The notes under the pieces are model-generated. The model was not told the origin of the DNA, searched no databases, and saw only the letters and a list, made by a program, of their open reading frames with translations. Positions 30,082-52,342 of a stretch of DNA of 64,000 bases are shown in pieces. The stretch's first letter is position 1. Each line of letters starts with the position of its first letter. A program made the position numbers and the translations under genes. Location: the IMG/VR virus record IMGVR_UViG_3300027844_001828, positions 124,001-188,000 of that record; one strand, written 5' to 3'.

Positions 30082-31251
30082 ATGGAAATTGACATGATAA
30101 AATCAATGTTAGATTCAGATTTATACAAGTTTTCAATGCAAGCAGCAGTTCTTCACAATTTCCCCGGAGTAATTGTTGAATACCGTTTCAAATGCAGAAG
30201 TGTATGGGCGGATCTCGCCCAGCATAGGGATGAAATCGAGAGACAAATAGGTTTCCTTGGCAACCTTTACCTCACTCCCGACGAAGAGAAACAGGTTCGC
30301 GAGAAAATACCTTTCCTCAAGCCAGACTATGTTGATTTCCTTTCTGAATTCAGATTCAACCCTGATTTCGTGAAAGTTGAAACGATTTCTGATACTGAGA
30401 TTGATATTATTGTTCGCGGCCCATGGCTCCAAACAATTCCTTTCGAGGTCCCAATCCTTTCTATTGTTGAAGCAGTAGCATGCAAAGACTTAATGACTGA
30501 TGAAGCCTTGAGCATTGGCAGAAGAAACTTGGCTGACAAGATTGAAATCATCAAGGCCGTTGGTCCAGAATTCAAATTAGCAGATTTCGGGACTCGTCGC
30601 AGAGCGAGTTTCGAGCAGCAACGTTATGTTGTAGAGACACTTACGAATGAAGTTCCAAACAACTTTGTTGGGACAAGCAATGTCTCCCTCGCTTTAGATA
30701 ACAATATTAAACCAATCGGAACGATGGCGCATGAGTGGATTCAAGCAATGCAAGGTCTCACTTGGTTGCTCAATAGCCAGAAAATGGCTTTAGATATATG
30801 GATGAAAGAATATCGTGGTCAGCTTGGTATTGCTTTGTCCGACTGTCTTGGATACGCCGCTTTCCTTAGAGACTTCGATTTCCTCTTTTCGAAGAGCTAT
30901 GACGGCTGTCGCCATGACTCTGGCGATCCGTTTGAATGGGGTGAGAAGTTGATTAGACACTATGAATCAATGAGCATCGATCCGAAAACAAAGACAGCAG
31001 TATTCAGCGATGGTCTCGACATGATATTGGCCGTGAGGTTGTTTGAAAGGTTCCATGGGAGAATCAAAGTCTCTTTCGGCATTGGCACCCACTTGACCAA
31101 CGACCTTGGATTTGATCCTGTTCAGATCGTTTTGAAGATGGTCGAGTGTAATGGTCAACCGGTAGCAAAGATAAGCGACTCGTCTGGCAAGGGTATGTGT
31201 AATAACGCCGTATATCTTACCCATCTTAAAAACATGTTTGAGGTGGATTGA
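30082..31251 (+). CDS. pncB: nicotinate phosphoribosyltransferase
   Basis: LDSDLYKFSM, ADFGTRRR, GTSN, GTMAHEW, RHDSGDP, FSDGL, FGIGT, KISDS.GK. Confidence 0.93.
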   Translation: MEIDMIKSMLDSDLYKFSMQAAVLHNFPGVIVEYRFKCRSVWADLAQHRDEIERQIGFLGNLYLTPDEEKQVREKIPFLKPDYVDFLSEFRFNPDFVKVETISDTEIDIIVRGPWLQTIPFEVPILSIVEAVACKDLMTDEALSIGRRNLADKIEIIKAVGPEFKLADFGTRRRASFEQQRYVVETLTNEVPNNFVGTSNVSLALDNNIKPIGTMAHEWIQAMQGLTWLLNSQKMALDIWMKEYRGQLGIALSDCLGYAAFLRDFDFLFSKSYDGCRHDSGDPFEWGEKLIRHYESMSIDPKTKTAVFSDGLDMILAVRLFERFHGRIKVSFGIGTHLTNDLGFDPVQIVLKMVECNGQPVAKISDSSGKGMCNNAVYLTHLKNMFEVD

Positions 31252-31655
31252 TGGGTGAGATTATCTGTTTGGTAATATTCGCATTGGTGTGGGCTCATGA
31301 GCACTTCGCACCAGTAGTCAGAACTGTGGGCAAGGGTAAGATGTTTGAGACCCTTCAGGAATGGGCAGATTGGGCCTCACAGCAGAGGTTCCCTGCTCTA
31401 TGGGCTGAATGTTATGCAGGCTCTGATCTTGGATATCTTGATATCTTGACTCACGACTGCCATTGGAAATCCAAACCAAGTAAGCGTAGGTACGTGAGAA
31501 TATATGCCGTAAGAACACTTCTAGACATTTTGGGCCTTGATGCTTTTGAGCAACGATTTCTTGATAATAATGAAGATATAGCATGGGAGGAACCTGAAGA
31601 TAATGATGTACTCTATATACTGAGCCATTCATTCCTGTTAGCGGGAGTCGGATAG
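31248..31655 (+). CDS. hypothetical protein carrying a diverged copy of the beta-helix-module N-terminal cap
   Basis: N-terminal hydrophobic segment then FETLQEWADWA...LWAECYAGSDLG...YVRIYA. Confidence 0.6.
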   Translation: MMGEIICLVIFALVWAHEHFAPVVRTVGKGKMFETLQEWADWASQQRFPALWAECYAGSDLGYLDILTHDCHWKSKPSKRRYVRIYAVRTLLDILGLDAFEQRFLDNNEDIAWEEPEDNDVLYILSHSFLLAGVG

Positions 31656-31675
31656 TCGCTGTTATATCCGTTAAA

Positions 31676-31876
31676 TTGTCGGTGGTAGATCTTCCTGATA
31701 ATGTTATTTATACATTCTATGATAGGTCTGAATATGGCGAGGGGAAGTTCGGTATTCTTAATTACAAAGACCTTTTATTGATGAATAATATTCAAGTCGT
31801 TTCTGGAGAATTGGAAGCTGAATCAGTTGATAAATTGTTAGACGGAGTCATAGAAGAAGTTCCTATTGATTTCTGA
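31676..31876 (+). CDS. small hypothetical protein
   Basis: ORF track; TTG start; in + strand gene run. Confidence 0.4.
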   Translation: MSVVDLPDNVIYTFYDRSEYGEGKFGILNYKDLLLMNNIQVVSGELEAESVDKLLDGVIEEVPIDF

Positions 31877-31880
31877 ACAA

Positions 31881-32066
31881 ATGACAACCCGTCGAGGGAG
31901 AATTGAAACCCAGGCAGAAATGTGGGTTCCAATGATCAGGAAGCTAAACTTTGGAGAGACATATAAGGAAGCTCAATTGCGGGAGTATTTCGCATTCATT
32001 GGAAAGACTCATGGGGAAAATGTGTGTGAGGATATGAAAAAGATCTATAGAGAGTCAGAGAGCTAA
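31881..32066 (+). CDS. small hypothetical protein
   Basis: ATG 31881; convergent overlap with the next - strand gene. Confidence 0.5.
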   Translation: MTTRRGRIETQAEMWVPMIRKLNFGETYKEAQLREYFAFIGKTHGENVCEDMKKIYRESES

Positions 32067-32557
32067 GCCTTTATTTTGGCAATTATATCACTTGTCCCAG
32101 TGCCTTCAATATGTTTAAGCAATTCAATCTTGATTCCAAGGCCCTCAATAAACGTCCTTTCGGTCTGATTTATTGTATCCATAGTATAATCTCCGCCTTT
32201 CACATAGACCTCCGGTCTAATCTTATCAATATATGGTGTGAAGTCATCAGTATCAAATATGAATACATAGCCTACACACTCAAGAGAGGCCAACATGTAT
32301 GCACGTTCGTTTTCGCTGATAATAGGTCTGGAATCGCCCTTAAGTCGCTTAATATTGCTATCTGAGTCAATTCCGACAACAAGTAGGCTTGCAAGTTTAG
32401 AAGCTTCTTGTAAATATTTTACATGGCCACAGTGTAATAGATCAAAACATCCATTCGTGGTCACGATGGTAAAATCTTGAAGCCCCCGTCTCATAGCCTC
32501 TATTTTCCAAAAGCCTTTTTCAGTGATTATCTTTTCGGAGGGGTCTTTCATTAACAA
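32063..32557 (-). CDS. RfaE/HldE domain II-like nucleotidylyltransferase (heptose-1-phosphate adenylyltransferase family)
   Basis: TTNGCFDLLHCGHVKYL, VGIDSD.NIKRLKGDSRPI, YVKGGDY. Confidence 0.88.
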   Translation of the reverse strand: MLMKDPSEKIITEKGFWKIEAMRRGLQDFTIVTTNGCFDLLHCGHVKYLQEASKLASLLVVGIDSDSNIKRLKGDSRPIISENERAYMLASLECVGYVFIFDTDDFTPYIDKIRPEVYVKGGDYTMDTINQTERTFIEGLGIKIELLKHIEGTGTSDIIAKIKA

Positions 32558-32560
32558 TCC

Positions 32561-33577
32561 TTATGATTCGGCTTTGACCTTTGCCGCATTATACAATCCT
32601 CTGGAAACAGAATATAATGGGTCTCTCGCTAATTCAATAGAGGCAACTGGAATCGGGAATTCTTCTTCGATCTTTACCTTCATCACATCGATGAAACCAC
32701 CAACCATTGAAGTCCCACCGGCCACAACAATCTTAATAGGATCTGATATATTGGGGAGGCTTTTTGGATCGGTTGAAGAATACAACTCATTGAATTTGTC
32801 AACAATGTATTCAATCAATGATTCATAATAGATGGCAATAGCGTTCTCGACATTGTCCTTTCTATTCATAAGATCCATCCCAGCTTCTTTTCGATGCTGA
32901 ATGACGTTCATTGTTTCATTACATGCTATAGCCGCATTCTTATCAATGTAATCACCAGAACGGGCGATTGAGAAACTGAATATAGGCATGCCTAAGAAGG
33001 CGTAGCAGACATTTACCATTCCGGCACCGCATGATATTCCAATACCTGAAAAGCCTTCATCTTCCAATTCTGAATAAACAATAGCGAGGCCCTCATTCAT
33101 TTTGTAAGTATTCTTGTATCCAACGTTACTTAAGACGTTCTTTACAGTGCTTGCATGATATGTGACATCAAAATCAGCGTCGATTGGATCGGCTGGGATT
33201 GAATAGTAAACGATATCGTCTTCATTCTCAGGTTCTCCAAGGACACCCTTAATCAATTGAGAAACCATGACAGTGCTTTCGGGCTCAGCGGGATTGAGGA
33301 CACCATTTGACATCGGTCGCAAACATTCTTTATGGAATAGGTTCGCAAATTTGAAAGCGTCATCGCCAAGGATGTAAATGGTTTCGCCAATCTTGACGAA
33401 ATTAGCGCCAGATTTAATAAGCATGGATTCACCGAAATTCATTGCTGAACCGGCCATGAAGTTGCCTGGATCGATCTTGAAGAATACGTCTTTTACTTTA
33501 TGGTATTCAAACTGATCATCTTTCTTTTCTGAAGCAACAATATTACCTGTTCCAACATCTAAACCTACAAATCTCAT
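32561..33577 (-). CDS. actin-like (ASKHA) ATPase
   Basis: Phosphate-1 GLDVGTG, connect NEGLA, phosphate-2 ISCGAGMVN, adenosine VVAGGTS. Confidence 0.8.
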   Translation of the reverse strand: MRFVGLDVGTGNIVASEKKDDQFEYHKVKDVFFKIDPGNFMAGSAMNFGESMLIKSGANFVKIGETIYILGDDAFKFANLFHKECLRPMSNGVLNPAEPESTVMVSQLIKGVLGEPENEDDIVYYSIPADPIDADFDVTYHASTVKNVLSNVGYKNTYKMNEGLAIVYSELEDEGFSGIGISCGAGMVNVCYAFLGMPIFSFSIARSGDYIDKNAAIACNETMNVIQHRKEAGMDLMNRKDNVENAIAIYYESLIEYIVDKFNELYSSTDPKSLPNISDPIKIVVAGGTSMVGGFIDVMKVKIEEEFPIPVASIELARDPLYSVSRGLYNAAKVKAES

Positions 33578-33578
33578 A

Positions 33579-33884
33579 TTACTCTCCTTTTATTTGTCCA
33601 ATTCTTTTTCCGTCAAAAGAACTTGTTACTTGAAATTGTCCAATTTCCATCGGCATGTCTTCAACAACCTTTTTTCTTTTTTTCTTTTTCGAACTTGGGA
33701 TGTCGTCAAGGCTGACTTTCTCTTCTTCAGGGATAGCCCTGTTGTCAGTATTGTTCATTTTCTTTGGAAATTTATAATCAATAAACCGAATTCCAGCGTA
33801 AACTAATACAATAGTCACTGCCAAAGGAATGGCAAGGACCAATAATAATAGACCAAATAGTAAAATGTTTCCAGCGGTAAACAA
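33579..33884 (-). CDS. membrane-anchored hypothetical protein
   Basis: N-terminal TM helix, poly-Lys patch; co-oriented upstream of the actin-like gene. Confidence 0.65.
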   Translation of the reverse strand: MFTAGNILLFGLLLLVLAIPLAVTIVLVYAGIRFIDYKFPKKMNNTDNRAIPEEEKVSLDDIPSSKKKKRKKVVEDMPMEIGQFQVTSSFDGKRIGQIKGE

Positions 33885-33969
33885 TTATGACTCCAGTTTA
33901 TCTATATAATTACTTTTTTATATTAATTTAGTCCTGCTTTATATTGTACATCAAAAATTGAAAATGGGC

Positions 33970-33997
33970 TTGAATTATGGAGAAATAACGGTATAAT
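33970..33997 (+). promoter_or_regulatory. sigma70-like promoter (TTGAAT-N16-TATAAT)
   Basis: Consensus -10; divergent intergenic region. Confidence 0.65.
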
Positions 33998-34069
33998 ATA
34001 ACATGTTCAGACTCTCATTTTGGTAGAGGGTCATTATTTGTATTATTAAGAATAACGGAGAACAAGCAA

Positions 34070-34429
34070 ATGACAAATAGTATTTGTTGTGAAGAGATGA
34101 GCGAGCTTTTGAAAGGACTAACCAACGCAGAGAGGAAAGGCGTCAAGGCTCTCTTAACAGATGGTGGGTCAATTGATGAGATGGTTATTGAGGGTGATGG
34201 TTTCATTCCCAATGTCATTTTCAGATTTTGCCCTTTCTGCGGACACGAAGTGAGTGAGAAAGCAGACGTTACTAAATCCAGTCTCCAATTGGATTTGGAA
34301 AAGATCGTTGGCGAATCAATCGACGAATCAACCCCCGATTTCAAACGTGCGGCTCTTGCAGAAGACAAGGTTAGTCGTATTGGCTCCCTCATTAGTAGGG
34401 CAGCGGCAAAAGGGGCTTTCAAGAAATAG
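34070..34429 (+). CDS. hypothetical protein (CPFCG motif)
   Basis: GGAG RBS; ORF track. Confidence 0.65.
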   Translation: MTNSICCEEMSELLKGLTNAERKGVKALLTDGGSIDEMVIEGDGFIPNVIFRFCPFCGHEVSEKADVTKSSLQLDLEKIVGESIDESTPDFKRAALAEDKVSRIGSLISRAAAKGAFKK

Positions 34430-34443
34430 AGGAACAAAACACA

Positions 34444-34587
34444 ATGGCAAAGAGTAGATTACAGTATAAATTACGCTATTACTTTAGAAATTTTATGCAT
34501 CTCGTTGGGGTTTGCCCAGAATGTAGATCGAGAGTTAATTATGCACGGGGCGGATATACTGTGTGCCCATCATGTGGAGCAAGATAA
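34444..34587 (+). CDS. small zinc-ribbon protein (47 aa; not in ORF track)
   Basis: GAGG RBS; CPEC...CPSC; TAA immediately before the next ATG. Confidence 0.6.
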   Translation: MAKSRLQYKLRYYFRNFMHLVGVCPECRSRVNYARGGYTVCPSCGAR

Positions 34588-34588
34588 T

Positions 34589-34861
34589 ATGATACAATTT
34601 CTATCAATAAATTTAATGGGATGGAAGGACATTATTCCCTTAAGAGACGTTTCTTTTAGGGTGCTAAGATATAAAAAAACTTCAATAATGAAAGTTTTTG
34701 TTGGAAATCATTTGGGACCAGAAAAAAGGTTCATCACACTAAAGTTTGACACGAAAAGCGGCGCAGATGAATCCATGGATCAAATAGGTGGAGCCATAAA
34801 TCAGAATAAAGTTTTTGTGGAAGTGTCTGGCACTTATGAACTATGCTACGGAGCCAAATGA
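34589..34861 (+). CDS. hypothetical protein
   Basis: ATG 34589 preferred over the TTG at 34505, which overlaps the zinc-ribbon ORF. Confidence 0.55.
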   Translation: MIQFLSINLMGWKDIIPLRDVSFRVLRYKKTSIMKVFVGNHLGPEKRFITLKFDTKSGADESMDQIGGAINQNKVFVEVSGTYELCYGAK

Positions 34862-35244
34862 AGAATCGAGTTCTCCCAAGCGAAGAGTGCAAAGATGGGT
34901 ATTTGTATCAAATCATTGCCAGGAACGCATACGCTGGCGTTTGGGTCGCTGAGAAAAGGCTATTTATAATAAGGCGAGTCAAGTCCAAAAGCGTATACTT
35001 GTGTCAAGAATTGCATTGGGACTCTCATGATCGTCATGGGACGGCTCAACCAATTAGAGAGATTTGCAAAGCCCCAGACCTCGAAGGTCAAGAATTGATT
35101 GACTTTTTGAAAGAGACAGAAGATGATATTTGGGAAAATCACGATGCTCCATTCTGGACCCATGAAGGCACTGACGAATCCAGAGAGAAATGGGGATATA
35201 CTGTACAAAACTGGGAAAAACAGTTTGACAAACGCGATAGATAG
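34858..35244 (+). CDS. hypothetical phage protein
   Basis: ATGA overlap with the upstream gene. Confidence 0.65.
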   Translation: MKNRVLPSEECKDGYLYQIIARNAYAGVWVAEKRLFIIRRVKSKSVYLCQELHWDSHDRHGTAQPIREICKAPDLEGQELIDFLKETEDDIWENHDAPFWTHEGTDESREKWGYTVQNWEKQFDKRDR

Positions 35245-35291
35245 TCTATGTTGTTAGAATAGTCAAAAACACCGAACCCAAGATAAGTACT

Positions 35292-37226
35292 ATGACAATA
35301 CGTGGATACCACAAGATCGCTATTGCTGTACCCAAGCTCACCCTTGCAGATCCAGCCGCAAACGCTGAAGAAATTTGTAAGCAGATATCCTCTGTGCAAA
35401 ACACAGGTGTTTCAGTGATGCTTTTCCCGGAACTCTGTGTGACTGGATACTCATGTGGAGACCTCTTCCAGAGTAGAGCCTTGATAGAGGCCGGGTATGC
35501 TGCTTTAGGTAAAATCGCTGAAATGACAAAATGGGTTGACGGTTTACAAAGCGTCCCCACGGTGATTGTCGGCGCTCCCATTATAGCGTATGGAAAGTTG
35601 TATAACTGTGCTATAGTAATCTCTGATGGCAAAGTTTCTGGAATAGTACCAAAGAGTTACCTCCCCAACTACAAAGAGTTTTATGAGAAGAGATGGTTTG
35701 CTTCTGGAAAGGGGGTCAAAAACGACTCTTTGTCAGGGATTAATGATAGTCAAATAAGTTTCGGCACCGATTTGATTTTTAATTGCCGCAATGACGATCC
35801 ATTCCCCTTTGCTGTTGAAGTGTGCGAAGACTTGTGGGCTGTAAACCCTCCCAGCAATGATTACGCACTTGCCGGTGCCGAAGCTATTTTTAACTTGTCA
35901 GCGAGTAATGAACTTGTTGGTAAAGCATCTTTTAGAAAAGATCTTGTGGTTGCACATAGCGCCAAATTAATGTCTGCATATTTTTATGCCTCATCTGGAA
36001 TTTACGAGTCTGTTTCAGACGTGGTATTCGGTGGACATATGATGGCCGCAGTAAACGGGCACTTGATTAAAGAGAACGATAGGTTCAATCGTGAATCAGA
36101 AGTGATGACTGTTGCCGTTGATTTTGAAGCTATAGAACAACAACGTCGTTCCGAATCAATCTTTAGAGATTATGACACCATTGAAATGAGAGGTCAGGAT
36201 GTCAATCTTTACCGAACTGCCAATGCTGACTATTCAGATCTTGTCATTGATCCACATCCATTTGTCCCGTCTAATGAAAGTGTCATGAATGAGCGGTGTC
36301 AAGAGATTTTCACGATTCAATCAACAGCACTCGCCAATCGACTTCAACATGTCGGTGAAAATACGAAAGCGGTTATTGGCGTATCGGGAGGACTTGATTC
36401 AACACTTGCACTTCTTGTTGTTGAAAAAGCATTCAAACTCTTGGATAAAGATCTTGAAGATATCATTGCAGTAACAATGCCTGGACCCGGAACGTCAGAT
36501 AGAACCTTTAAAAATGCAAACGAGTTGTGTTTTGAAATGGGCATGGGATTAAAGGAAATAAGAATTAAAGAGGCTTGTGAACAACACTTAAAAGACATTG
36601 GACATGAATCGACAAGTGATGTGACATACGAAAACGTTCAAGCCCGTGAGCGCACACAAGTATTAATGGACCTTGCCAACAAACATGACGGTATCGTCAT
36701 TGGAACAGGTGATCTTTCAGAGATCGCACTTGGCTGGTGTACATATAATGGGGATCACATATCAATGTATGCTGTTAATTGCAGTGTTCCTAAGACCTTG
36801 GTGAAGCACTTGGTTTCATGGGTGGCTGATAGTGGTAATGTTACCACCAGAACAGGGGAAATTTTGCATGATATTGTTGATACGCCAATCTCTCCAGAAT
36901 TACTTGCGCCAAAAGATGGTGAGATCTCTCAAAAGACAGAAGATATCATCGGACCATATGAGCTTCATGATTTTTTCCTTTACTATACAATAAAGTTTGG
37001 GTTTACACCTGATAAGATTATCACTCTTGCCAAACTCGCATTCACAGAATATGAAGAGGCGGAGATTAAAACTTGTATGGAGACTTTTATCAAGAGATTT
37101 TTTGGGAATCAATTCAAACGCAATTGCATACCTGACGGGCCAAAGGTCGGTAGTATCTCATTGTCGCCTCGTGGAGACTGGAGAATGCCAGTTGAGGCCA
37201 GTTCAGCGGCCTGGATGAAAAGTTGA
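35292..37226 (+). CDS. nadE: glutamine-dependent NAD+ synthetase
   Basis: Nitrilase triad FPELC / PKSYLPNYKEFYE / VCEDLW; synthetase GVSGGLDST, ENVQARERT, GDLSEIALGW, FKRNCIPDGPKVG; promoter TTGACA-N16-TATGTT at 35225-35252. Confidence 0.96.
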   Translation: MTIRGYHKIAIAVPKLTLADPAANAEEICKQISSVQNTGVSVMLFPELCVTGYSCGDLFQSRALIEAGYAALGKIAEMTKWVDGLQSVPTVIVGAPIIAYGKLYNCAIVISDGKVSGIVPKSYLPNYKEFYEKRWFASGKGVKNDSLSGINDSQISFGTDLIFNCRNDDPFPFAVEVCEDLWAVNPPSNDYALAGAEAIFNLSASNELVGKASFRKDLVVAHSAKLMSAYFYASSGIYESVSDVVFGGHMMAAVNGHLIKENDRFNRESEVMTVAVDFEAIEQQRRSESIFRDYDTIEMRGQDVNLYRTANADYSDLVIDPHPFVPSNESVMNERCQEIFTIQSTALANRLQHVGENTKAVIGVSGGLDSTLALLVVEKAFKLLDKDLEDIIAVTMPGPGTSDRTFKNANELCFEMGMGLKEIRIKEACEQHLKDIGHESTSDVTYENVQARERTQVLMDLANKHDGIVIGTGDLSEIALGWCTYNGDHISMYAVNCSVPKTLVKHLVSWVADSGNVTTRTGEILHDIVDTPISPELLAPKDGEISQKTEDIIGPYELHDFFLYYTIKFGFTPDKIITLAKLAFTEYEEAEIKTCMETFIKRFFGNQFKRNCIPDGPKVGSISLSPRGDWRMPVEASSAAWMKS

Positions 37227-37394: not shown

Positions 37395-37949
37395 ATGAGT
37401 GAGGAATCAGCGAAAATATTGACCCTAGAGGATTATCATTATCATCTATTCAACAAGGAATTCAATCGCGAAAGTACTGGTGAGGCGATGTCATTTATTA
37501 TTACCAGGAATTTGATGAAAGAAAAGAAGCCTGAAGTTTTGAAAATGGTTATCACTTCTCCAGGCGGAGATGTCAGTTCTGCTTTTGCTCTAATTGATAC
37601 AATGAAGGGATCAAAAATACCCATATACACTTATGGATTGGGAGTCGTCGCTAGTTGTGGCGTGTTAACGTTTATTGCCGGAGAAAAAGGGCATCGATAC
37701 ATTACAAAGAACACACAGATACTTTCTCATCAATATCAATGGGGAAGCTATGACAAATATCATGAGTTAATGTCAATCGTGGGTGAATTCAAAAATATCC
37801 ACAAAAGGTTCATTCGACATTACAAGAAATGCACTGGCTTATCGAAAAAGGAGATTAAGAAGTATCTTCTTCCCGCTAAGGACGTTTGGTTGACAGCACA
37901 AGACGCTGTTGATCTCGGCATGGCAGATGAAATCGTTGATTTTTATTAA
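37395..37949 (+). CDS. clpP: ATP-dependent Clp protease proteolytic subunit
   Basis: ITSPGG, VASCG (Ser), LSHQ (His), KDVWLTAQDAVDLGMAD (Asp). Confidence 0.92.
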   Translation: MSEESAKILTLEDYHYHLFNKEFNRESTGEAMSFIITRNLMKEKKPEVLKMVITSPGGDVSSAFALIDTMKGSKIPIYTYGLGVVASCGVLTFIAGEKGHRYITKNTQILSHQYQWGSYDKYHELMSIVGEFKNIHKRFIRHYKKCTGLSKKEIKKYLLPAKDVWLTAQDAVDLGMADEIVDFY

Positions 37950-45079: not shown

Positions 45080-45745
45080 TTAATCGTTCCAATAATCTTT
45101 CTCGTCATCGTCGTTATCCTCAAAGGCGTGAGGGCTTACTTCCCCATCCCATTCATAATCGATATTGAAATCTTCTTGAAGCATTTCAAAGTTGTTCAAA
45201 TCATTATCTATAAGTGAATGTCCTTGACCGTGTCCAAAGACAACCTCTTGGACTCTACCTTTTGGCATTTCAACGCCAAAATATTCAATGCCATTTGGAA
45301 TTACTCCATAAACTGGTTGGTCATTTGTTAAGTGTGAGGGAGTTATATCTATAACCTTTCCATTTAATGAATTCCACCCGTGATTCCTGAAAAATGTTCC
45401 GGCATATCCTTCAACATATTTGAAGTCATTGTCATGTAACATTAATAATTGAGAAGAGTAGAAACACTCTTTGACTTCCCCGCGTTTAAAAATACTATAA
45501 AGGCTTTCAATTTTTTCCTGTTCTTCAGGGGTCAATTCAGCAGACTCATACAGTTTGCCATGGGTCAAATAGAAATATGGCATCGTAGGATAATGAAAAT
45601 CGCTTGTTTGAGAATTCATTCCTACTTGCATAATGTGTTGCATAGCCAGAGCAGTCATAATCTGGCTGTGTGAAAACTGATTTTTCCAGGCCAATAATTC
45701 AGGCGTTATGTTCTCGATCCAATTTGATTTTTTGTACCAATTCAT
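45080..45745 (-). CDS. hypothetical protein with MNWYKKS N-terminus
   Basis: GGAG RBS before ATG 45745; GYA...HGWNS..G..ID segment. Confidence 0.7.
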   Translation of the reverse strand: MNWYKKSNWIENITPELLAWKNQFSHSQIMTALAMQHIMQVGMNSQTSDFHYPTMPYFYLTHGKLYESAELTPEEQEKIESLYSIFKRGEVKECFYSSQLLMLHDNDFKYVEGYAGTFFRNHGWNSLNGKVIDITPSHLTNDQPVYGVIPNGIEYFGVEMPKGRVQEVVFGHGQGHSLIDNDLNNFEMLQEDFNIDYEWDGEVSPHAFEDNDDDEKDYWND

Positions 45746-45858
45746 AGGGTCTCCAATTCCACTTATTATTCTTAACATACACAGAAAAACCCTTCCGGCA
45801 AAGCTTACTATATGGTCATGTGGCAGTATAGTATTACATGTAACAGGAGTAATGTCTT

Positions 45859-46218: not shown

Positions 46219-46247
46219 ATTATAAGAAGATTGAAAAGGAGTTAAAA

Positions 46248-46782: not shown

Positions 46783-46810
46783 TTGCATTGTTCCGAACCG
46801 ATGCTATAGT
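46783..46810 (+). promoter_or_regulatory. sigma70-like promoter (TTGCAT-N16-TATAGT)
   Basis: Direct reading; upstream of a ~210-nt leader. Confidence 0.6.
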
Positions 46811-46824
46811 ATAGATGTTTGGTG

Positions 46825-46946
46825 TTAAGAAAGGCTATGATGGTTCTTCCTTCTAAAAAGATAATGGATAAACCAGAGTCATCAATTACCTTCTTTTTTT
46901 ACATTTCAATTTTGGAGGGCATGAAAATTTTCTCTTCCTTCTAAAA
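46825..46946 (+). repeat. leader with two exact 14-nt repeats TCTTCCTTCTAAAA
   Basis: Copies at 46845-46858 and 46933-46946, each preceded by a complementary purine tract. Confidence 0.75.
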
Positions 46947-47027
46947 CTTCATTTAATAAGAAAACTTAGAGATTTCACTTCCCTCCGATTTATTTCATAG
47001 ACAAACAAAGCAACATAAGGATACACT

Positions 47028-49082
47028 ATGAAGCACTTCATTTTTTTGAGAAACAGTCTTGTACAATTCCCGGCCCAAGCCAAGGATGACCAAGCGTCAA
47101 GAAATATCGTCGGAACGATTTGTTCCAATTTGCTTTATTATGGGTATATATTCTCAACAGAAGCCTTGCGTGAATTCAACAAGTTAAGCGATGAAAACGT
47201 CATTGCGTGGTGGGAGACCGTCGAGCCTGCATTTAAGGAAATCACTGGTGAGTCCAAGAATATGGGTGATCATGTTGTCTATAAGAACTTTCCAAAGGAA
47301 GTACTTGATAAGTCATTGGCCGAGTATTGGATTTGCCAAATCTTTATGTACCTTGGCGTTCCAAATGAATTTTTCACGACCGAAGAGGTCGAAAGAGACC
47401 AGATGTTTGAAAGTATTTCTCTTAAGACACTTCAAGTCGCAAGAGCAAATAAGGAGCAGGACATCTGTCATGAGCTTTGTTTGACTCCGGCCAGATGGAC
47501 TGATGAGCAATCAATGTTTGTTGAACATCTTATTATCAATGAGAAGTGCTATTTTAATTTGTCAAAAATCCCCTTCAAGGAAAACATGATCCAAGTCGCA
47601 GTCTTGGCCATGAATAATGGTTTGGCGGCGAGTGTCAATTCAGCCACGGATGTGTTGCGCCTTGCAATTGGATTGTCCGATGGTGACATAACCATGCGAA
47701 CCAACACGCCATTTAGAAACTTTACGCGGAAGGAAAGACGTTTCTTGCTCACCTTGATTGAAAATCAGAATGATTGTGAGGAAGACATCGCTATGGACAA
47801 GAATCGTTGGAAGAAGCTTTTAAACAGATTGCATCCAGGCGATTATAAGAATGCTTTCCCGAATGTGGTGAAGGCAAATAACAACTTGTACAACAACAAC
47901 GTTGTCAGCTTCAATTCAAAGCTTGAGAAATATCTTGAGACTGAAGACGCATACGCTCTCGTTCTTCTTAAGAGCAGACCCGGTGTCTTTGCAAGAAGAT
48001 TGTCTCACGCTATTTCAATATTTGGAAGCGCGGCCATCGACGCTTTCGCAGAAATTTGTCCAAAGCTCACGGTTATTAAACTCCTTAAGGTGAAGAAGTT
48101 CTTTTCAACCTTGAAGGAAAGAAATCATCTTGTTTATCCGCCGAAGAGTAATTGGGCCAAGTTGCAGATCGTTGAAAACTCAAAGGCGATACGTCACAAT
48201 CCACAGGTCATAACTCTTATTGGGAAGATCGACGATGCTCTTAATGAGAAGATGAGTGGAATTTCTGTCAATCTTGATTCCAGAACGAGTCTCGTTAAAA
48301 TCCAGGGCAACGACTCTGAATTAACGAACTATGGTCGTGGAACCGTGTTCCCGATTCCAGAGAATATTAATTTCATCAGAAGCGCAAGCTATTGGGAATT
48401 ACCTGACACTTTTAACAATTGGTACGACAATGGTTGGAACTTCTTTAACAAGGATTGGAAGGAAAAGGGCGCGTGTTGCTGGGCGAATATGACTTTCGCC
48501 AGAAAGGGATGCGCATTCTCTGGCGATCCAACCAACTCAAAGACTGCTGACGGAAAGGCGTGTCAAATGATCGACTTGTACATTGACAAGTTGTTAGCTT
48601 TTGGAGTACGTTATGCTGTTTGGAATGTCTTGTGCTATTCTCATAAGAAGTTCAGCGAGGCCACTGAGGTCTTTGGTGCGCTTCAATGGGGTGAGGCTCC
48701 GCAAAAGGGTAAGCTCTTCGAGCCAAGCCGTTGCCAACTCTCATTTCCAATTACTGGTGAATGCTATACCAAGTATATCGCATACATTGACTTGGAGAAG
48801 CGTGAACTTGTCTACATGGACGCTAACTTCAAGGCTGACGTTTCTTCCGCAAAGGAAAATGGTCGTATGCTTTCAGAAGTAATGCCAGCCTACATTGAAT
48901 ACTTGAATTCGTTGCCGAGCGTGTTCGATCTCTTCTCACATGCGAAGCAGGACGTGAATGGGACCGCTGTAGCCTATGACGATAGCAATATCGATATCAA
49001 GGGCACAAGTGCCTATGTATTCAATCCGACAAATGAGAACAACTCGTTCGAGCAGCTTGAAGTCGCCAAATTTTTATCTTAA
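47028..49082 (+). CDS. large hypothetical protein with C-terminal TerD-like region
   Basis: RPGVFARRL, GRGT.FP, FSGD.T, MIDL.IDKL, VRYAVWNV..YS..KF features of Ter-associated stress proteins. Confidence 0.6.
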   Translation: MKHFIFLRNSLVQFPAQAKDDQASRNIVGTICSNLLYYGYIFSTEALREFNKLSDENVIAWWETVEPAFKEITGESKNMGDHVVYKNFPKEVLDKSLAEYWICQIFMYLGVPNEFFTTEEVERDQMFESISLKTLQVARANKEQDICHELCLTPARWTDEQSMFVEHLIINEKCYFNLSKIPFKENMIQVAVLAMNNGLAASVNSATDVLRLAIGLSDGDITMRTNTPFRNFTRKERRFLLTLIENQNDCEEDIAMDKNRWKKLLNRLHPGDYKNAFPNVVKANNNLYNNNVVSFNSKLEKYLETEDAYALVLLKSRPGVFARRLSHAISIFGSAAIDAFAEICPKLTVIKLLKVKKFFSTLKERNHLVYPPKSNWAKLQIVENSKAIRHNPQVITLIGKIDDALNEKMSGISVNLDSRTSLVKIQGNDSELTNYGRGTVFPIPENINFIRSASYWELPDTFNNWYDNGWNFFNKDWKEKGACCWANMTFARKGCAFSGDPTNSKTADGKACQMIDLYIDKLLAFGVRYAVWNVLCYSHKKFSEATEVFGALQWGEAPQKGKLFEPSRCQLSFPITGECYTKYIAYIDLEKRELVYMDANFKADVSSAKENGRMLSEVMPAYIEYLNSLPSVFDLFSHAKQDVNGTAVAYDDSNIDIKGTSAYVFNPTNENNSFEQLEVAKFLS

Positions 49083-49152
49083 TTGGTTATCTGATAACCA
49101 CTTGAAATTTTCTGAAACCATGTTATGATAATAAGGTAACAGGAGGATCAGG

Positions 49153-49494
49153 ATGGGTAAAGGTAAAAAAGAAATCAGGTGATTATTCCGGTCTTCGGTA
49201 TTTAAGCGTGACGACTATACATGTGTATGTTGCAAGGTCATTGGGGATGTAGACGCACATCATATTATAGATCGGAATCACTTTCCTGACGGCGGTTATG
49301 TCATAGACAACGGGATTACCCCATGTCCAGATTGTCACATCTTGGCAGAAGTTTATCACGATGGCGATGGCAGGGAGTATTCAGAAGGGAAGCACCCTCT
49401 CGACTTGTTAAAGGCAATAGGGTCTTCATTTATAGACAACCCACCGTGTTCATGTAACAACTGTGTTGTTTGTGATCACTTTATAAGAAAGTGA
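49153..49494 (+). pseudogene. HNH endonuclease gene with in-frame TGA at codon 10 (not in ORF track)
   Basis: AGGAGG RBS; MGKGKKEIR*LFRSSVFKRDDYTCVCC..DAHHII..NGITPCPDCH; TGA at 49180-49182. Confidence 0.7.
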
Positions 49495-49501
49495 GGCTTA
49501 C

Positions 49502-51475
49502 ATGAAAAAAATTAATCGTGACGAGTTGATCGGTAAGATTAAGGAAAGAGAGTCGAAGCTTGAAAACGCTTCGATTGAACTCAAAAAACATTTCGTTGGT
49601 CTTAATCCAACAATCGATGAAATAATCGATTCAATAAGAGTCTGGTACATTATGCCAGAAATTATCACACATCCGGTAATCGTAAATCTTTGGGGAATGA
49701 CTGGAGTTGGGAAAACCGATTTGATTCGTCGCCTTGTACAGCTTCTTGATCTTAGTGATCGTTTTCTTGAAATGCCAATGGACATTGAAGACACAAGTAA
49801 CTTCCACTGGCACAGTTCAATTCAAGGTGTTCTTGGATGTAGCAGTCTTGAGCCCGAAACTCCAGGCGTTGTTCTCTTTGACGAATTCCAACGTTATCGC
49901 ACCATTGACGAGCATGGCCATGAGCGTACCGATCTTAAGAGGTTTCAAGATATTTGGACCCTTCTTAGCGATGGAAAGTTTTCAAACTCCGGCAAGGGTA
50001 AGAATGAGATCCTTGAGATGTTAATGGACACTCTTTATTATGAAGAGAGAAGTGGAGACGACGACGCCGATGTAGAGCCCCCTATTGAACATGGTAATTT
50101 GACAACTAAGAGTAAGAACAAGAAAAATAAGGAAGTCAGCACTAAGAAGCGCTTTAGCTTCAGTTTCTATTCTGCCAAATCATTAAAGAAGACTCTCAGA
50201 ATCCCTGACACCATTGAAACCATAATGAAATGGACCGCCGAAACCAAAAAGAAGAAAATCATGGAGGCAATGGAAAGAGATGATATCCTTCATGGTGAAA
50301 GCTATTCCCAACTTTTGATTTTCATTTGTGGTAATCTTGATTCTGCATTCTGGATGGCCTCCCGCGCTGAAGATGCAGATACCGATGCAGATATCTTGCA
50401 CAAGCGAAGTCTTGATATTAACACAATAGATATCCGCACTTCATTGAAAACGAGATTCAGGTATGAACAGATTGCCCGACTTGGCAATACTCATATCATT
50501 TATCCGTGCTTGTCTTCAAAATCTTACCGGGAACTTATTTCTAGAAAGATCATAGACGCAACCAATAGTTTTAAGGCAAGCACCGACATTGACATCAAAG
50601 TTGATCGTTCGGTAAACAATGTGATATACAGAAATGGGGTGTTCCCCGCTCAAGGTGTAAGGCCAGTATTTAGTACGATCAACAGTTTGTTTACAACTTC
50701 AATGCCACCATTTATCATGGCGGCGCTCTTAGAAGACTGTAATCAAATTGACGTATCCTTCAAAGACAACAAAATGGTTTGTAAAATACGCGATCAAAAT
50801 CTCAGTAAGAAGGTGACCTGTAGTATTGACAATATTAAGGGCAAGACTTCTGAGGAACAAAAGCATCTCGTGGCGTTGCACGAAGCTTCACATGCTGTTG
50901 TTTATATGTTGAAGTTTGGCGTTGCGCCATGTCAGATTAAAAGTAATATATCAATGTTCTCTGGCGGCTTTGTAATGCCACACTCTATGTTAGAGTCAAA
51001 GAATATCTTGATAAGCTTGATTCAGGTTTATCTTGCTGGCCGTCTCGGTGAAATCGCATTTTTTGGTGACGGGATGACCTCGTCAGGGTGCGCTTCCGAT
51101 CTTATGGAAGCAACTAAGTTGGCCAGTAAAATGCTCCGTCGTTACGGCATGGGTGATAGCTTGTCAGTTGTTGTGACATCTAACTTTGAAGATGCCAGTC
51201 TTCTTAATCTTGATGTTGACGGAACAAACAAAGATATTGATTTGATACTTGACAATCGAGCCAAGGAAACGTCTATTATCATTAACGAAAATTTATCCTT
51301 CATTGGCGCAATCGCTGATGAATTGATGAGAAAGAATGGTGAGATGACAGATAAAGAGGTCGCTAAAATAGCCGAAGAGTTTTGTGAAAATAAAATTGAG
51401 TGTCTCCCAGCTGATCATAAAATCACTGAGAGTTATGTTGATAAGTATAATGAGAGGCGAACGGATGAAAATTAA
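49502..51475 (+). CDS. AAA+ ATPase fused to C-terminal M41 (FtsH-type) metallopeptidase; no TM segment
   Basis: Walker A GMTGVGKT, Walker B VLFDEFQ, ALHEASHA, LAGRLGE, SDLMEAT. Confidence 0.85.
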   Translation: MKKINRDELIGKIKERESKLENASIELKKHFVGLNPTIDEIIDSIRVWYIMPEIITHPVIVNLWGMTGVGKTDLIRRLVQLLDLSDRFLEMPMDIEDTSNFHWHSSIQGVLGCSSLEPETPGVVLFDEFQRYRTIDEHGHERTDLKRFQDIWTLLSDGKFSNSGKGKNEILEMLMDTLYYEERSGDDDADVEPPIEHGNLTTKSKNKKNKEVSTKKRFSFSFYSAKSLKKTLRIPDTIETIMKWTAETKKKKIMEAMERDDILHGESYSQLLIFICGNLDSAFWMASRAEDADTDADILHKRSLDINTIDIRTSLKTRFRYEQIARLGNTHIIYPCLSSKSYRELISRKIIDATNSFKASTDIDIKVDRSVNNVIYRNGVFPAQGVRPVFSTINSLFTTSMPPFIMAALLEDCNQIDVSFKDNKMVCKIRDQNLSKKVTCSIDNIKGKTSEEQKHLVALHEASHAVVYMLKFGVAPCQIKSNISMFSGGFVMPHSMLESKNILISLIQVYLAGRLGEIAFFGDGMTSSGCASDLMEATKLASKMLRRYGMGDSLSVVVTSNFEDASLLNLDVDGTNKDIDLILDNRAKETSIIINENLSFIGAIADELMRKNGEMTDKEVAKIAEEFCENKIECLPADHKITESYVDKYNERRTDEN

Positions 51476-51635
51476 AGAACTCCAAGAATTAGTCAATGGT
51501 AGATTCATTGACGCCTTTGGCAGAACACCACTTCGGCAGCGACAGGAAGATATTTTGGGCGAGGCGATTGAACTCAAAAACGCAACAGATATTACGAATC
51601 TCAGAGAAGAGACGGGGGATTTGCTTCAACAATGA
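51465..51635 (+). CDS. MazG-like helical fragment, apparently the frameshifted N-terminus of the NadD gene
   Basis: EDILGEAIEL...NLREETGDLL; continuation (AST)MMLCSESGWSVEEL lies in another frame. Confidence 0.55.
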   Translation: MKIKELQELVNGRFIDAFGRTPLRQRQEDILGEAIELKNATDITNLREETGDLLQQ

Positions 51636-52342
51636 TGTTGTGTAGTGAGTCTGGCTGGTCAGTAGAAGAGCTTGTGCAGTCAACTCTTAATAAGACAGAG
51701 AGAAGAAAGGAGCAATACCACACGTTGGGGAGAAAGACAAAGGTCGCTCTTCTTGGTGGGGCTTTTAATCCGCCTACGATTGGCCACTTAAGGCTTGCAC
51801 AGTTCATTCTCGATACAAGTAAGAACTTCGATGAGGTTTGGTTTGTACCGTGTTATCAGCACATGTATAACAAAGAACTCGTTACACCAGAGCATAGATT
51901 GGCTATGTGTAACTTGTTATGCGCTAACGATTGCAGAATAAAGACATTTGATTATGAGATCAAAAATCAATTACGTGGTGAGACTTACCATTTTGTAAAG
52001 AGATTGCTTGATGAAGACTTTGCAAAAGACCAATATGATTTTAGTATGATAATTGGGTTGGACAATGCTAACACATTTGATAAGTGGGTGAACTACGAAG
52101 ATCTTGAGAAGATGATGCGCTTTGTCGTGGTGTCTCGACAAGGGACCGAAAGAGATGAGTCTGTAGACTGGTACTTAAAGCCACCACACATTTATCTTTA
52201 CAGTGGTGGTGATGTCCCAGAGATATCTTCAACGGAAATCAGAAGGTGTATCGTCGAAGACGACACATCACAAGCCGCTTACGTTAAAGAGTTCATGGAT
52301 GATGGGGTATGGAAATACCTTTGTGATAACGAACTTTATTGA
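51632..52342 (+). CDS. nadD: nicotinate-nucleotide adenylyltransferase
   Basis: LLGGAFNPPTIGH, HRLAM, IIGLDNANTFDKW, EISSTEIR. Confidence 0.88.
   Translation: MMLCSESGWSVEELVQSTLNKTERRKEQYHTLGRKTKVALLGGAFNPPTIGHLRLAQFILDTSKNFDEVWFVPCYQHMYNKELVTPEHRLAMCNLLCANDCRIKTFDYEIKNQLRGETYHFVKRLLDEDFAKDQYDFSMIIGLDNANTFDKWVNYEDLEKMMRFVVVSRQGTERDESVDWYLKPPHIYLYSGGDVPEISSTEIRRCIVEDDTSQAAYVKEFMDDGVWKYLCDNELY

What the first reader, a model, noticed from the sequence alone, without database searches (positions are those of the whole stretch)
30082..52342. Complete phage-encoded Preiss-Handler NAD+ pathway (PncB + NadD + Gln-dependent NadE)
Seen: pncB (30082-31251), nadE (35292-37226) and nadD (51632-52342), all with intact catalytic motifs. 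Established: together they convert nicotinate to NaMN, NaAD and NAD+. The described phage NAD-reconstitution pathways that counter NAD-depleting defences use amidated routes (Adps/Namat; Nampt/Nmnat). This is the deamidated route. Inference: a distinct anti-defence NAD-rebuilding strategy that needs a nicotinamidase (PncA, host-encoded or outside this window), or a supply line for the phage's NAD consumers (LigA, PARP).
Basis: partly seen in the sequence, partly recalled or inferred. Interest (0 to 1): 0.72.

Follow-up and report, generated by a model that had tools for sequence, protein, structure and literature searches.

The report
Phage nicotinate-to-NAD pathway genes
A very large marine phage carries the three enzymes that turn nicotinic acid into NAD+; this gene set is already reported from other giant phages, but here the genes are scattered, the nicotinamidase that many related phages carry was not found, and one gene is the surviving half of a broken fusion gene.

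Summary
pncB (30082-31251), glutamine-dependent nadE (35292-37226) and nadD (51632-52342) are real ORFs with strong family matches and intact catalytic residues. The contig is viral: tail genes lie just upstream, and replication genes match phage families.

The novelty claim does not hold. Li et al. 2024 (PMC11662467) described "NAD-jumbo phages" with complete Preiss-Handler sets plus LigA and PARP, and proposed a role against NAD depletion. In my own sample of 30 IMG/VR records, 15 carry all three genes, mostly as tight clusters.

New details found here:
- Seven of those 15 also carry a PncA-like gene beside pncB, including all four that are at least 80% complete. This phage has none in about 281 kb read, but its genome is not closed.
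- nadD is the downstream piece of a frameshift-split MazG-NadD fusion that is intact in relatives. The split is identical in every assembly checked.
- The genes sit in three separate putative transcription units on different mosaic modules. An integrase-bearing variant is joined to a Lentisphaeria chromosome 95 nt upstream of nadE.

The anti-defence role remains untested. An NAD supply module is the better-supported reading. Verdict: a new member of a known kind, of moderate interest.

The parts
27783..29780 (+). NAD+-dependent DNA ligase LigA, an NAD consumer. It is probably the first gene of the unit that contains pncB. Other assemblies call a 649-aa product that starts about 48 nt further in.
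   Evidence: NF005932 495 bits (cut-off 369), with adenylation, OB and BRCT domains. sigma70-like site at 27770-27797 and no terminator-like site before pncB. Gene call.
30082..31251 (+). pncB, nicotinate phosphoribosyltransferase (nicotinate + PRPP -> NaMN). The alternative start is M5 at 30094.
   Evidence: TIGR01514 447 bits, 1YIR E 3e-112, His217 in GTMAHEW. It is the only PF04095 gene in the record.
31248..31655 (+). 134-aa ORF overlapping the pncB stop codon by 4 nt. Function unknown.
   Evidence: No Pfam or NCBIfam hit. Poor model and no relatives in the ESM Atlas.
35196..35197 (.). Recombination junction 95 nt upstream of nadE. In an integrase-bearing variant the phage sequence ends here and continues into an 80-aa ORF, a tyrosine integrase, tRNA-Met, rpsO and a Lentisphaeria-like chromosome.
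   Evidence: Five contigs from different samples and assemblers, plus one RNA-run contig, share the exact breakpoint.
35225..35252 (+). sigma70-like promoter candidate (TTGACA-16-TATGTT) 40 nt upstream of nadE. Consensus match only.
35292..37226 (+). nadE, glutamine-dependent NAD+ synthetase (NaAD + ATP + Gln -> NAD+).
   Evidence: NF002730 837 bits, 3DLA E 2e-129, Glu47/Lys121/Cys178, SGGLDS at 365-370.
51465..51635 (+). 56-aa ORF encoding the detached N-terminal half of a MazG-like four-helix domain. It keeps the ExxE and EExxD acidic motifs. Its stop codon overlaps the nadD start codon (ATGA).
   Evidence: tblastn of fused relatives hits this frame for their residues 1-58. Family invariants are retained. 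The sequence is identical in L033 and L034.
51621..51635 (+). Frameshift site that splits the ancestral MazG-NadD reading frame, between '...GDLL' and 'AST..LC.ESGW'.
   Evidence: All six IMG/VR relatives examined are open through this point.
51632..52342 (+). nadD, NaMN adenylyltransferase domain (NaMN + ATP -> NaAD). Residues 1-31 are the leftover second half of the MazG-like domain.
52361..52387 (+). Terminator-like hairpin plus T-run just after nadD. Consensus match only.
56852..58294 (+). PARP-like protein (WGR, PARP regulatory and PARP catalytic domains) with the H-Y-E triad kept. A candidate NAD consumer.

Best explanation
This is a phage-borne Preiss-Handler NAD+ synthesis set of the 'NAD-jumbo phage' kind. 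PncB makes NaMN from nicotinate and host PRPP. NadD adenylates NaMN to NaAD. Glutamine-dependent NadE amidates NaAD to NAD+. Its most likely role is to keep NAD+ available during infection for the phage's own NAD-using enzymes: LigA in the same putative transcription unit as pncB, an apparently active PARP, an AlaDh/PNT-type enzyme and an NAD-dependent epimerase. Any buffering against NAD-depleting defences would be a possible by-product.

Because no nicotinamidase was found, the phage must draw nicotinate from the host's PncA or from the environment.

Shown: gene identity, catalytic residues, fold, viral context, and recurrence in other phages. Inferred: that the enzymes are active, that nadD is still translated (by re-initiation at the ATGA overlap), the operon structure, and the physiological purpose.
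For: - Family scores, motifs and fold for all three enzymes.
- Viral context: a tail tube/minor tail gene 8 kb upstream of the record's left end, DnaE-type polymerase at phrog_405 881 bits, and phage-only PHROGs.
- LigA is followed by pncB with a promoter-like site before LigA and no terminator between them.
- The PARP keeps its H-Y-E triad.
- Further NAD(H) enzymes are present.
- All three genes co-occur in 15 of 30 IMG/VR records, mostly clustered within 3-9 kb. LigA lies within 4 kb of the cluster or of nadD in G009 and G024, and a PARP lies 1.2 kb from pncB in G002.
- The same picture was published for gut jumbo phages (PMC11662467).
- Jumbo phage PA5oct induces the host pncA-pncB1-nadE operon, which shows a demand for this route during jumbo-phage infection (PMC7318152).
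- The phage recurs nearly unchanged in at least 12 seawater metagenomes from 2017-2024.
Against: - No enzyme was assayed.
- nadD is split from its MazG-like half and scores just under the TIGR00482 cut-off.
- No PncA, PRPP synthetase or PnuC was found, so the pathway depends on host supply.
- Metatranscriptome contigs covered 31650-35196 but not pncB or nadE. Those are low-depth contigs and cannot show absence.
- The three genes share no upstream motif and lie on different mosaic modules, so co-regulation is not shown.
- The host's own NAD pathways could not be examined.
Confidence: 0.5

Rival explanations
1. Dedicated counter-defence. The set exists chiefly to rebuild NAD+ after NADase-type defences (Thoeris, DSR, SIR2-HerA and similar) cleave it. 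It would work in series with a nicotinamidase (the host's here, phage-encoded elsewhere) that turns the released nicotinamide into nicotinate.
For: - Phage NAD+ reconstitution is a proven counter-defence for NARP1, NARP2 and NARP3.
- In other phages a PncA-like gene sits beside pncB or inside the cluster. This holds for 7 of the 15 records with all three genes, including all four that are at least 80% complete. The G026 copy is a clear nicotinamidase, matching 1ILW at E 3.5e-39. That layout fits recycling of nicotinamide, which is the product of NADases.
- Li et al. and the phage X1 authors propose this role.
Against: - This phage lacks PncA in about 281 kb read, so it cannot use nicotinamide on its own.
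- The route costs PRPP, up to three ATP and a glutamine per NAD+. It does not reuse ADP-ribose.
- No experiment on the deamidated route exists. The NARP paper does not mention it.
- pncB is linked to LigA, not to known anti-defence genes.
Confidence: 0.25
2. Partly decayed or incomplete pathway. The frameshift has crippled the MazG-NadD gene, so only PncB and NadE matter (boosting the first and last steps) and the host's own NadD supplies the middle step. Alternatively, the genes are unrelated cargo on separate mosaic modules that merely add up to a pathway on paper.
For: - A fixed frameshift lies inside the fusion gene.
- The candidate host lineage has its own nadD next to rsfS.
- pncB lies in a 58-kb block that is absent from close relatives, while nadE and nadD lie beyond a recombination junction.
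- The three genes have different nearest relatives.
- They sit in three separate putative transcription units.
Against: - The 236-codon nadD ORF has no further lesions. It keeps every family-invariant residue on both pieces and models at pLDDT 93.
- The ATGA stop/start overlap is a standard arrangement for translational coupling (established knowledge).
- Co-occurrence of the trio in many phages argues that the combination is selected.
Confidence: 0.15
3. The contig is cellular or chimeric, so these are ordinary bacterial housekeeping genes.
For: - An integrase-bearing variant of the same sequence is joined to a bacterial chromosome.
- No T4-type terminase domain was found in the record.
- CheckV's 93% completeness is wrong, because the genome continues at both ends.
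Against: - Tail genes, phage-type replication genes and phage-only PHROG families are present.
- Of 295 ORFs, 246 are on one strand.
- Apart from one tRNA there are no cellular housekeeping genes, and the bacterial flank begins only beyond the integrase and tRNA-Met.
- The PncB and NadD relatives peak at 55% and 68% identity, so these are not copies of a host gene.
- Integration of a relative makes it a temperate phage lineage, not a cell.
Confidence: 0.03

Closest known systems
'NAD-jumbo phages' with the Preiss-Handler set, e.g. Kuafu_71 and Kuafu_19 (Li et al. 2024, Microbiome; PMC11662467)
   Same: A phage genome over 200 kb encoding pncB, nadD and nadE, often with NAD-dependent LigA and PARP. 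A supply role and a possible role against NAD depletion have been proposed. The paper reports such phages from seawater as well.
   Different: - The described examples are gut phages with predicted Bacteroidota hosts and clustered genes.
- This one is marine, with a candidate Lentisphaeria host.
- Here the genes are 4 kb and 14 kb apart, in separate units.
- nadD is a split MazG-NadD fusion, a feature the paper does not mention.
Bacterial Preiss-Handler salvage (PncA-PncB-NadD-NadE), e.g. the P. aeruginosa pncA-pncB1-nadE operon
   Same: Same enzyme families and the same chemistry. PncB is 47% identical to gammaproteobacterial PncBs, and its closest solved structure is P. aeruginosa PncB 1YIR (E 3e-112). 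NadE is of the long M. tuberculosis type.
   Different: No PncA here. The genes are diverged: at most 55% identity to any cellular PncB. NadD belongs to a clade found mostly on phage-sized contigs that carries an N-terminal MazG-like domain.
NARP2 (Nampt + Nmnat), NARP1 (Adps + Namat) and NARP3 (PnuC + NadR) phage NAD+ reconstitution pathways
   Same: Phage-encoded routes that end in NAD+. PncB shares the type II phosphoribosyltransferase fold family (PF04095) with Nampt and Namat.
   Different: This route is deamidated, passing through NaMN and NaAD, and needs NadE. It starts from nicotinate, not from nicotinamide, ADP-ribose or nicotinamide riboside. No Adps-like, Nampt-like, PnuC or NadR gene is present. 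There is no experimental anti-defence evidence for it.
Four-gene PncA-PncB-NadD-NadE cassettes in other IMG/VR phages (e.g. G009, G026, G028, G029; complete 469.6-kb G025)
   Same: The same three enzymes. Several share the MazG-NadD type (G022-G025, G029), and some also have LigA nearby.
   Different: Those carry a nicotinamidase-like gene next to pncB and usually keep the genes within 3-9 kb of each other. This phage has neither feature.
Xanthomonas phage X1 (PMC13384950)
   Same: A cultured phage annotated with pncB, nadD and nadE. Its authors suggest a role against NAD+ depletion.
   Different: X1 also carries nadM and NAMPT, which are amidated-route genes. Only the annotation was reported. 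I did not compare sequences.

Membership tests
PncB (nicotinate phosphoribosyltransferase, TIGR01514 / NF003704) | Whole-protein score above the curated cut-off | tested here: met
   446.9 bits against 269.55, and 495.5 against 379.
PncB (nicotinate phosphoribosyltransferase, TIGR01514 / NF003704) | Autophosphorylated His in the GT(M/Q)AHEW motif, and full-length alignment to a solved PncB | tested here: met
   His217. 1YIR residues 12-399 align to query 5-388 at E 3e-112.
PncB (nicotinate phosphoribosyltransferase, TIGR01514 / NF003704) | Nicotinate (not nicotinamide) as substrate | not testable with these tools
   Only inferred from the equivalog models. The NAMPT-type PHROG scores far lower, at 64.6 bits.
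Glutamine-dependent NAD+ synthetase (NF002730) | Score above the cut-off, with both the nitrilase-like and the synthetase domain | tested here: met
   837 bits against 473. CN_hydrolase at 15-286 and NAD_synthase at 347-577.
Glutamine-dependent NAD+ synthetase (NF002730) | Glu-Lys-Cys glutaminase triad and SGGxDS ATP-binding loop | tested here: met
   Glu47, Lys121, Cys178 and S365-GGLDS, aligned to the M. tuberculosis enzyme. The 6OFC chain has Ala in place of the triad Cys at the aligned position.
NadD (NaMN adenylyltransferase, TIGR00482) | Score above the curated cut-off | tested here: not met
   112.1 bits against 112.45, missed by 0.35 bit. Relatives in other phages score from 81 to 136 bits.
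NadD (NaMN adenylyltransferase, TIGR00482) | (H/T)xGH and ISSTxxR nucleotidyltransferase motifs, and the NadD fold | tested here: met
   T49-I-G-H52 and I198-SSTEIR. Model pLDDT is 93, and the top 50 PDB matches are all NadD, with target TM-score 0.85.
NadD (NaMN adenylyltransferase, TIGR00482) | Preference for NaMN over NMN | not testable with these tools
   Inferred only from family membership and from the presence of NadE.
MazG-NadD fusion family found here (no published name) | One ORF of about 290-310 aa with an N-terminal MazG-like four-helix domain (ExxE...EExxD) followed by NadD | tested here: not met
   The relatives are single ORFs, with Pfam MazG at 24 bits against a cut-off of 22. 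In this phage the frame is broken into a 56-aa ORF plus the 236-aa nadD. All invariant residues are kept on the two pieces.
'NAD-jumbo phage' (Li et al. 2024) | Phage genome over 200 kb that encodes every step of one salvage or Preiss-Handler route | tested here: met
   The record is 235.6 kb and the genome is at least 281 kb. pncB, nadD and nadE are present, with the caveat that nadD is split.
NARP1 | Adps (PRPP-synthetase-like) plus Namat (Nampt-like) | tested here: not met
   No PF13793 match. The only PF04095 gene is the PncB-type one.
NARP2 | Nampt plus an NMN adenylyltransferase (NadM or NadR type) | tested here: not met
   No second PF04095 gene. The other two PF01467 genes are RfaE-domain-II-like and PPAT-like, not NMNAT.
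NARP3 | PnuC transporter plus NadR | tested here: not met
   No PF04973 match in the record.
Anti-defence system (functional class) | Restores phage growth on hosts with NAD-depleting defences | not testable with these tools

The most novel reading that the evidence does not exclude
The deamidated route is a fourth, so far untested, phage NAD+ reconstitution pathway. Its full form would be a four-gene PncA-PncB-(MazG-)NadD-NadE cassette that recycles the nicotinamide released by NADase defences. The MazG-NadD fusion, found mostly on phage-sized contigs, would be a phage-specific adaptation of its middle step. This marine phage would then be a PncA-less, split-fusion derivative that leans on its Lentisphaeria host's nicotinamidase.
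Probability: 0.25. Interest if true: 0.7.

Novelty: new member of a known kind. Interest (0 to 1): 0.38.

Why it matters
NAD+ depletion is a widespread bacterial defence, and three phage pathways that rebuild NAD+ are experimentally proven. The deamidated route has been seen only in sequence surveys. If it worked as a counter-defence it would add a route that depends on a nicotinamidase, which would make host pncA status a determinant of phage success.

Three things here give concrete handles for that test:
- The contrast between phages that carry PncA next to pncB and this phage, where none was found.
- An apparently undescribed MazG-NadD fusion family.
- A candidate host (marine Lentisphaeria) for an otherwise uncultured jumbo phage.

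As it stands, the finding mainly extends a published pattern to a marine phage.

Tried and rejected
- Searching for pncA by walking the genome: I used other assemblies to read 26 kb beyond the right end of the record and 19 kb beyond the left. No isochorismatase gene appeared and the ends did not meet. Long contigs suggest about 100 kb or more is still unread.
- Exact-pattern scans of IMG/VR for the unseen part found nothing.
- Whole-record search of ENA contigs is not possible.
- Host NAD pathways: the Lentisphaeria flank protein has no close match among 80 GTDB loci or among 400 sampled Verrucomicrobiota genomes, so host pncA could not be checked.
- In-situ expression: the metatranscriptome contigs did not cover pncB or nadE. 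This is uninformative rather than negative.
- Shared promoter motif upstream of the three genes: none was found beyond the ribosome-binding site.
- NAD+ riboswitch: none.
- Re-association of the two pieces of the split MazG-like domain: complex prediction returned 'no answer', with score 0.00. I do not use it as evidence.
- The ORF coupled to pncB (31248-31655) as a hidden nicotinamidase or accessory protein: no family match, a poor model and no relatives.
- The second and third nucleotidyltransferase genes as NMNATs: rejected. One is RfaE-domain-II-like and the other PPAT-like.
- The weak Macro-domain hit at 25222-25710 (15.7 bits) was not reproduced by hmmscan.
- T4-type terminase domains were not found in the record. 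Viral identity rests on tail and replication genes instead.
- Fold search of the fused relative was dominated by the NadD domain, so it did not test the MazG-like domain. Sequence hits of that domain to PDB MazG proteins are only weak, at E 0.03-0.04.
Full report
OBSERVATION.

- pncB passes two curated NCBIfam cut-offs: TIGR01514 at 446.9 against 269.55, and NF003704 at 495.5 against 379. It aligns end to end with P. aeruginosa PncB 1YIR at E 3e-112 and keeps the phospho-histidine motif, with His217.
- nadE is a long, glutamine-dependent NAD+ synthetase. NF002730 scores 837 bits against 473. It has a nitrilase-like domain and a synthetase domain, and matches M. tuberculosis NadE at E 2e-129. 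Glu47, Lys121, Cys178 and the SGGLDS loop are all present.
- nadD has the nucleotidyltransferase motifs T49-I-G-H52 and ISSTEIR. Its model has pLDDT 93, and the 50 best PDB matches are all NaMN adenylyltransferases. It misses the TIGR00482 cut-off by 0.35 bit.
- LigA lies 301 nt upstream of pncB. A WGR/PARP_reg/PARP protein with an intact H-Y-E triad lies at 56852-58294.

WHAT GENOME THIS IS.

The window is bases 124001-188000 of a 235,624-bp IMG/VR record with 41% GC.

The record is viral:
- 246 of 295 ORFs are on one strand.
- It has a DnaE-type polymerase (phrog_405, 881 bits), DnaB, helicases, SbcCD, PhoH and RNR, plus phage-only families such as phrog_33734 (527 bits) and phrog_13226.
- In other assemblies a tail-tube/minor-tail gene (PF18906, phrog_290) sits 8 kb upstream of the record's left end.

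CheckV's '93% complete' is wrong. The sequence continues at least 26 kb to the right and at least 19 kb to the left without closing, and the contigs involved are long enough to imply roughly 100 kb more.

The phage is marine. At least 12 seawater metagenomes from 2017-2024 hold the pncB-nadE stretch almost word for word.

OTHER NAD GENES.

In the record there is no PncA/isochorismatase, no second PF04095 gene (so no Nampt or Namat), no PRPP-synthetase-like Adps, no PnuC and no Nudix. tblastn with four phage PncA-like proteins against the record plus the 26-kb right-hand extension gave nothing better than E 0.3. The gene tables of both extensions list no isochorismatase domain.

Two further cytidylyltransferase-fold genes in the window are not NMNATs. 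One is RfaE-domain-II-like. The other is PPAT-like, with TNGY in place of TNGH.

Additional NAD(H)-binding enzymes are an AlaDh/PNT protein near the record's right end and an NAD-dependent epimerase/dehydratase in the right extension.

PRIOR ART.

- Li et al. 2024 (PMC11662467) reported that 174 of 668 gut jumbo phages encode a complete salvage or Preiss-Handler route. They named a pncB-nadD-nadE cluster (Kuafu_71), noted LigA in 90 of the 174 and PARP, found such phages in seawater too, and proposed a role against NAD+ depletion that still needs experiments.
- A cultured Xanthomonas phage is annotated with pncB, nadD and nadE, with the same suggestion.
- NARP3 is PnuC plus NadR, not this route.
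- The NARP1/2 paper does not mention the deamidated route.
- PA5oct infection induces the host pncA-pncB1-nadE operon.

What remains open is the experimental test.

MY OWN SURVEY.

Starting from IMG/VR relatives of each gene, I searched 30 whole records. Fifteen hold all three genes, usually within 3-9 kb of each other.

A PncA-like gene scores over the Pfam cut-off in 14 of the 30 records, typically next to pncB. Seven of those 14 are among the 15 with all three genes, including all four that are at least 80% complete: G010, G024, G025 (a complete 469.6-kb genome with terminal repeats) and G029. The G026 copy is a clear nicotinamidase, matching 1ILW at E 3.5e-39. Three others are assigned only by family and position.

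LigA is present in 4 of the 30 records and PARP in 1.

Caveats: the sample is conditioned on holding at least one of the genes, many records are fragments, and several are flagged as proviruses.

ORIGIN OF THE GENES.

PncB has no close donor. Its best hits plateau at 51-55% identity, some on Mb-size contigs, while the best viral relatives reach 50%.

NadD's nearest relatives are 54-68% identical. At E <= 1e-20 there are 896 such proteins. The top hits are proteins of about 290-310 aa that carry a MazG domain in front of NadD, on contigs up to 467 kb. Pfam confirms MazG on three of them, at 24 bits against a cut-off of 22. The model of one shows a four-helix bundle followed by the Rossmann domain, at pLDDT 93. 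E37, E40, E52, E53 and D56 are invariant in the family. I found no paper describing this fusion.

THE SPLIT nadD.

In this phage the fusion is broken. Residues 1-58 of the relatives match a 56-aa ORF (51465-51635) in another frame. That ORF ends '...EETGDLLQQ*', and nadD begins at an ATG overlapping its stop codon.

Six IMG/VR relatives are open through this point. The break is identical in two IMG/VR assemblies, and the 236-aa product is recorded on 12 contigs. No near-identical unbroken version exists in the protein database, where the next hit is 64% identical.

Both pieces keep all family-invariant residues. A prediction of whether the pieces re-associate gave no answer.

I infer that NadD is probably still made, by translational coupling, but this is not shown.

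ARCHITECTURE.

Consensus scans suggest three transcription units:
- LigA, a 40-aa ORF, pncB and a 134-aa ORF.
- nadE behind its own TTGACA-16-TATGTT site.
- An FtsH-like gene and the MazG-fragment/nadD pair, followed by a terminator-like hairpin.

These are pattern matches only. No common upstream motif and no NAD+ riboswitch were found.

MOSAICISM AND HOST.

Five contigs from different samples and assemblers, and one RNA-run contig, break from the phage sequence at exactly window 35196, which is 95 nt before nadE. They continue into an 80-aa ORF, a 576-aa tyrosine integrase, tRNA-Met, rpsO and ordinary bacterial genes.

One flank protein is 95% identical to a protein of an NCBI 'Lentisphaeria bacterium' MAG. 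A sister strain shows the same chromosome region, including the host's own nadD next to rsfS, with a different phage-like element at the same site.

In one such contig the phage side is colinear with this record, including pncB and LigA, at 99.9% identity. In two others the sequence jumps from G000 158452 to G000 100110, skipping a 58-kb block that contains RNR, LigA and pncB. No flanking repeat marks that jump.

The integrase is absent from the record.

So a close, integrase-bearing variant integrates at a tRNA-Met gene of a marine Lentisphaeria, which is a candidate host. pncB on one side, and nadE and nadD on the other, lie on different exchangeable modules. How the integrase-less form in the window relates to the integrated form is unexplained.

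EXPRESSION.

Contigs from two seawater metatranscriptomes cover 31650-35196 and stop at the junction. They do not cover pncB or nadE. They probably derive from the integrase-bearing variant. They neither support nor exclude expression of the NAD genes.

VERDICT.

The genes and the pathway are real, and they belong to a phage. The best-supported reading is an NAD+ supply module of the published 'NAD-jumbo phage' kind, feeding LigA, PARP and other NAD users (confidence 0.5). A dedicated counter-defence role is possible but untested, and it is weakened here by the missing nicotinamidase (0.25). A partly decayed pathway is the third option (0.15).

Novelty: a new member of a known kind. The MazG-NadD fusion and its split, the contrast in PncA content, and the integration junction are the new observations.

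Noticed in passing
window 35196/35197; loci L061=L077, L078, L079, L080, L081: There is an exact, recurrent breakpoint 95 nt upstream of nadE. An integrase-bearing variant of this phage is joined there to an 80-aa ORF, a 576-aa DUF6538/tyrosine integrase, tRNA-Met(CAT), rpsO and a bacterial chromosome whose ADH is 95% identical to a 'Lentisphaeria bacterium' MAG protein. The same junction appears in an RNA-run contig. This suggests a temperate jumbo-phage lineage and a candidate host.
   Followed up: partly
G000 100111-158451 (window 1-34451 is its right part); L078, L081: Two integrated relatives join G000 158452 directly to G000 100110 with no flanking repeat. They therefore lack a 58-kb block that holds RNR, the DNA methylase, LigA, pncB and the actin-like gene. 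The pncB block behaves as an exchangeable module.
   Followed up: partly
window 51465-52342; proteins P0242-P0360; loci L035-L039, L043: There is a large family (896 proteins at E <= 1e-20) of NadD relatives whose top members carry an N-terminal MazG-like pyrophosphohydrolase domain (invariant ExxE...EExxD). They lie mostly on phage-sized contigs, and I found no description in the searchable literature. What the MazG domain does next to NadD is unknown.
   Followed up: partly
window 44445-44925 (+): Full-length match to GOLLD RNA (RF02032): 148.1 bits against a gathering score of 150, E 1e-39, model positions 1-416 of 416. The phage's only tRNA (tRNA-Met, 44510-44580) is embedded in it.
   Followed up: no
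window 32561-33577 (-) and 32063-32557 (-): An actin-like protein of the volactin family (PF25216, 251 bits), a family named after an archaeal actin, lies next to a stand-alone RfaE-domain-II-like adenylyltransferase (TIGR02199, 159 bits). Both are on the minority strand, between pncB and nadE. This stretch is the part covered by the metatranscriptome contigs.
   Followed up: no
window 55642-56202 (+): A PPAT (CoaD)-like nucleotidyltransferase whose catalytic TNGH motif reads TNGY. It sits behind the best sigma70-like promoter match in the region (11 of 12, at 55566-55594) and just upstream of the PARP gene.
   Followed up: partly
G000 whole record; L065, L069, L072, L074, L167: The IMG/VR record is rated 93% complete by CheckV, yet it is a fragment. 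Other assemblies extend it by at least 26 kb on the right (small ORFs and an NAD-dependent epimerase) and at least 19 kb on the left (a 1607-aa ORF, tail genes, glycosyltransferases and a weak Nudix-like protein) without closing the genome.
   Followed up: yes
G000 231114-232202 (L054:3114-4202); L072:12294-13349: Two further NAD(H)-dependent enzymes belong to the same phage: an alanine dehydrogenase/PNT-type protein (PF01262, 252 bits) and an NAD-dependent epimerase/dehydratase (PF01370, 181 bits).
   Followed up: no
window 47028-49082, 49502-51475, 37395-37949; G000 47334-49535: A set of proteolysis-related genes: an FtsH-like protein with an M41 peptidase domain, a ClpP-like protease, a phrog_4871 'ATP-dependent protease' (474 bits), and a 684-aa protein of phrog_33734 that resembles the MXAN_6230/SCO0854 RING-domain family.
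   Followed up: no
G012 45193-45777 and G013 81583-82167 (IMG/VR records behind L021 and L022): The NadD match in these two related records contains two in-frame TAG codons, a possible sign of stop-codon recoding in those phages.
   Followed up: no
G010 71565-72231 (IMG/VR record behind L017): pncB in this 201-kb phage record is matched in two separate frames (132-aa and 513-aa open frames). It may therefore be frameshifted, although a PncA-like gene lies immediately beside it.
   Followed up: no
L162 17676-21047: In a sister Lentisphaeria strain the same rpsO site is followed by a different phage-like element (an 854-aa ORF and a Peptidase_S74/Gly_rich tail-fibre-type protein). This suggests an integration hot spot.
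   Followed up: no
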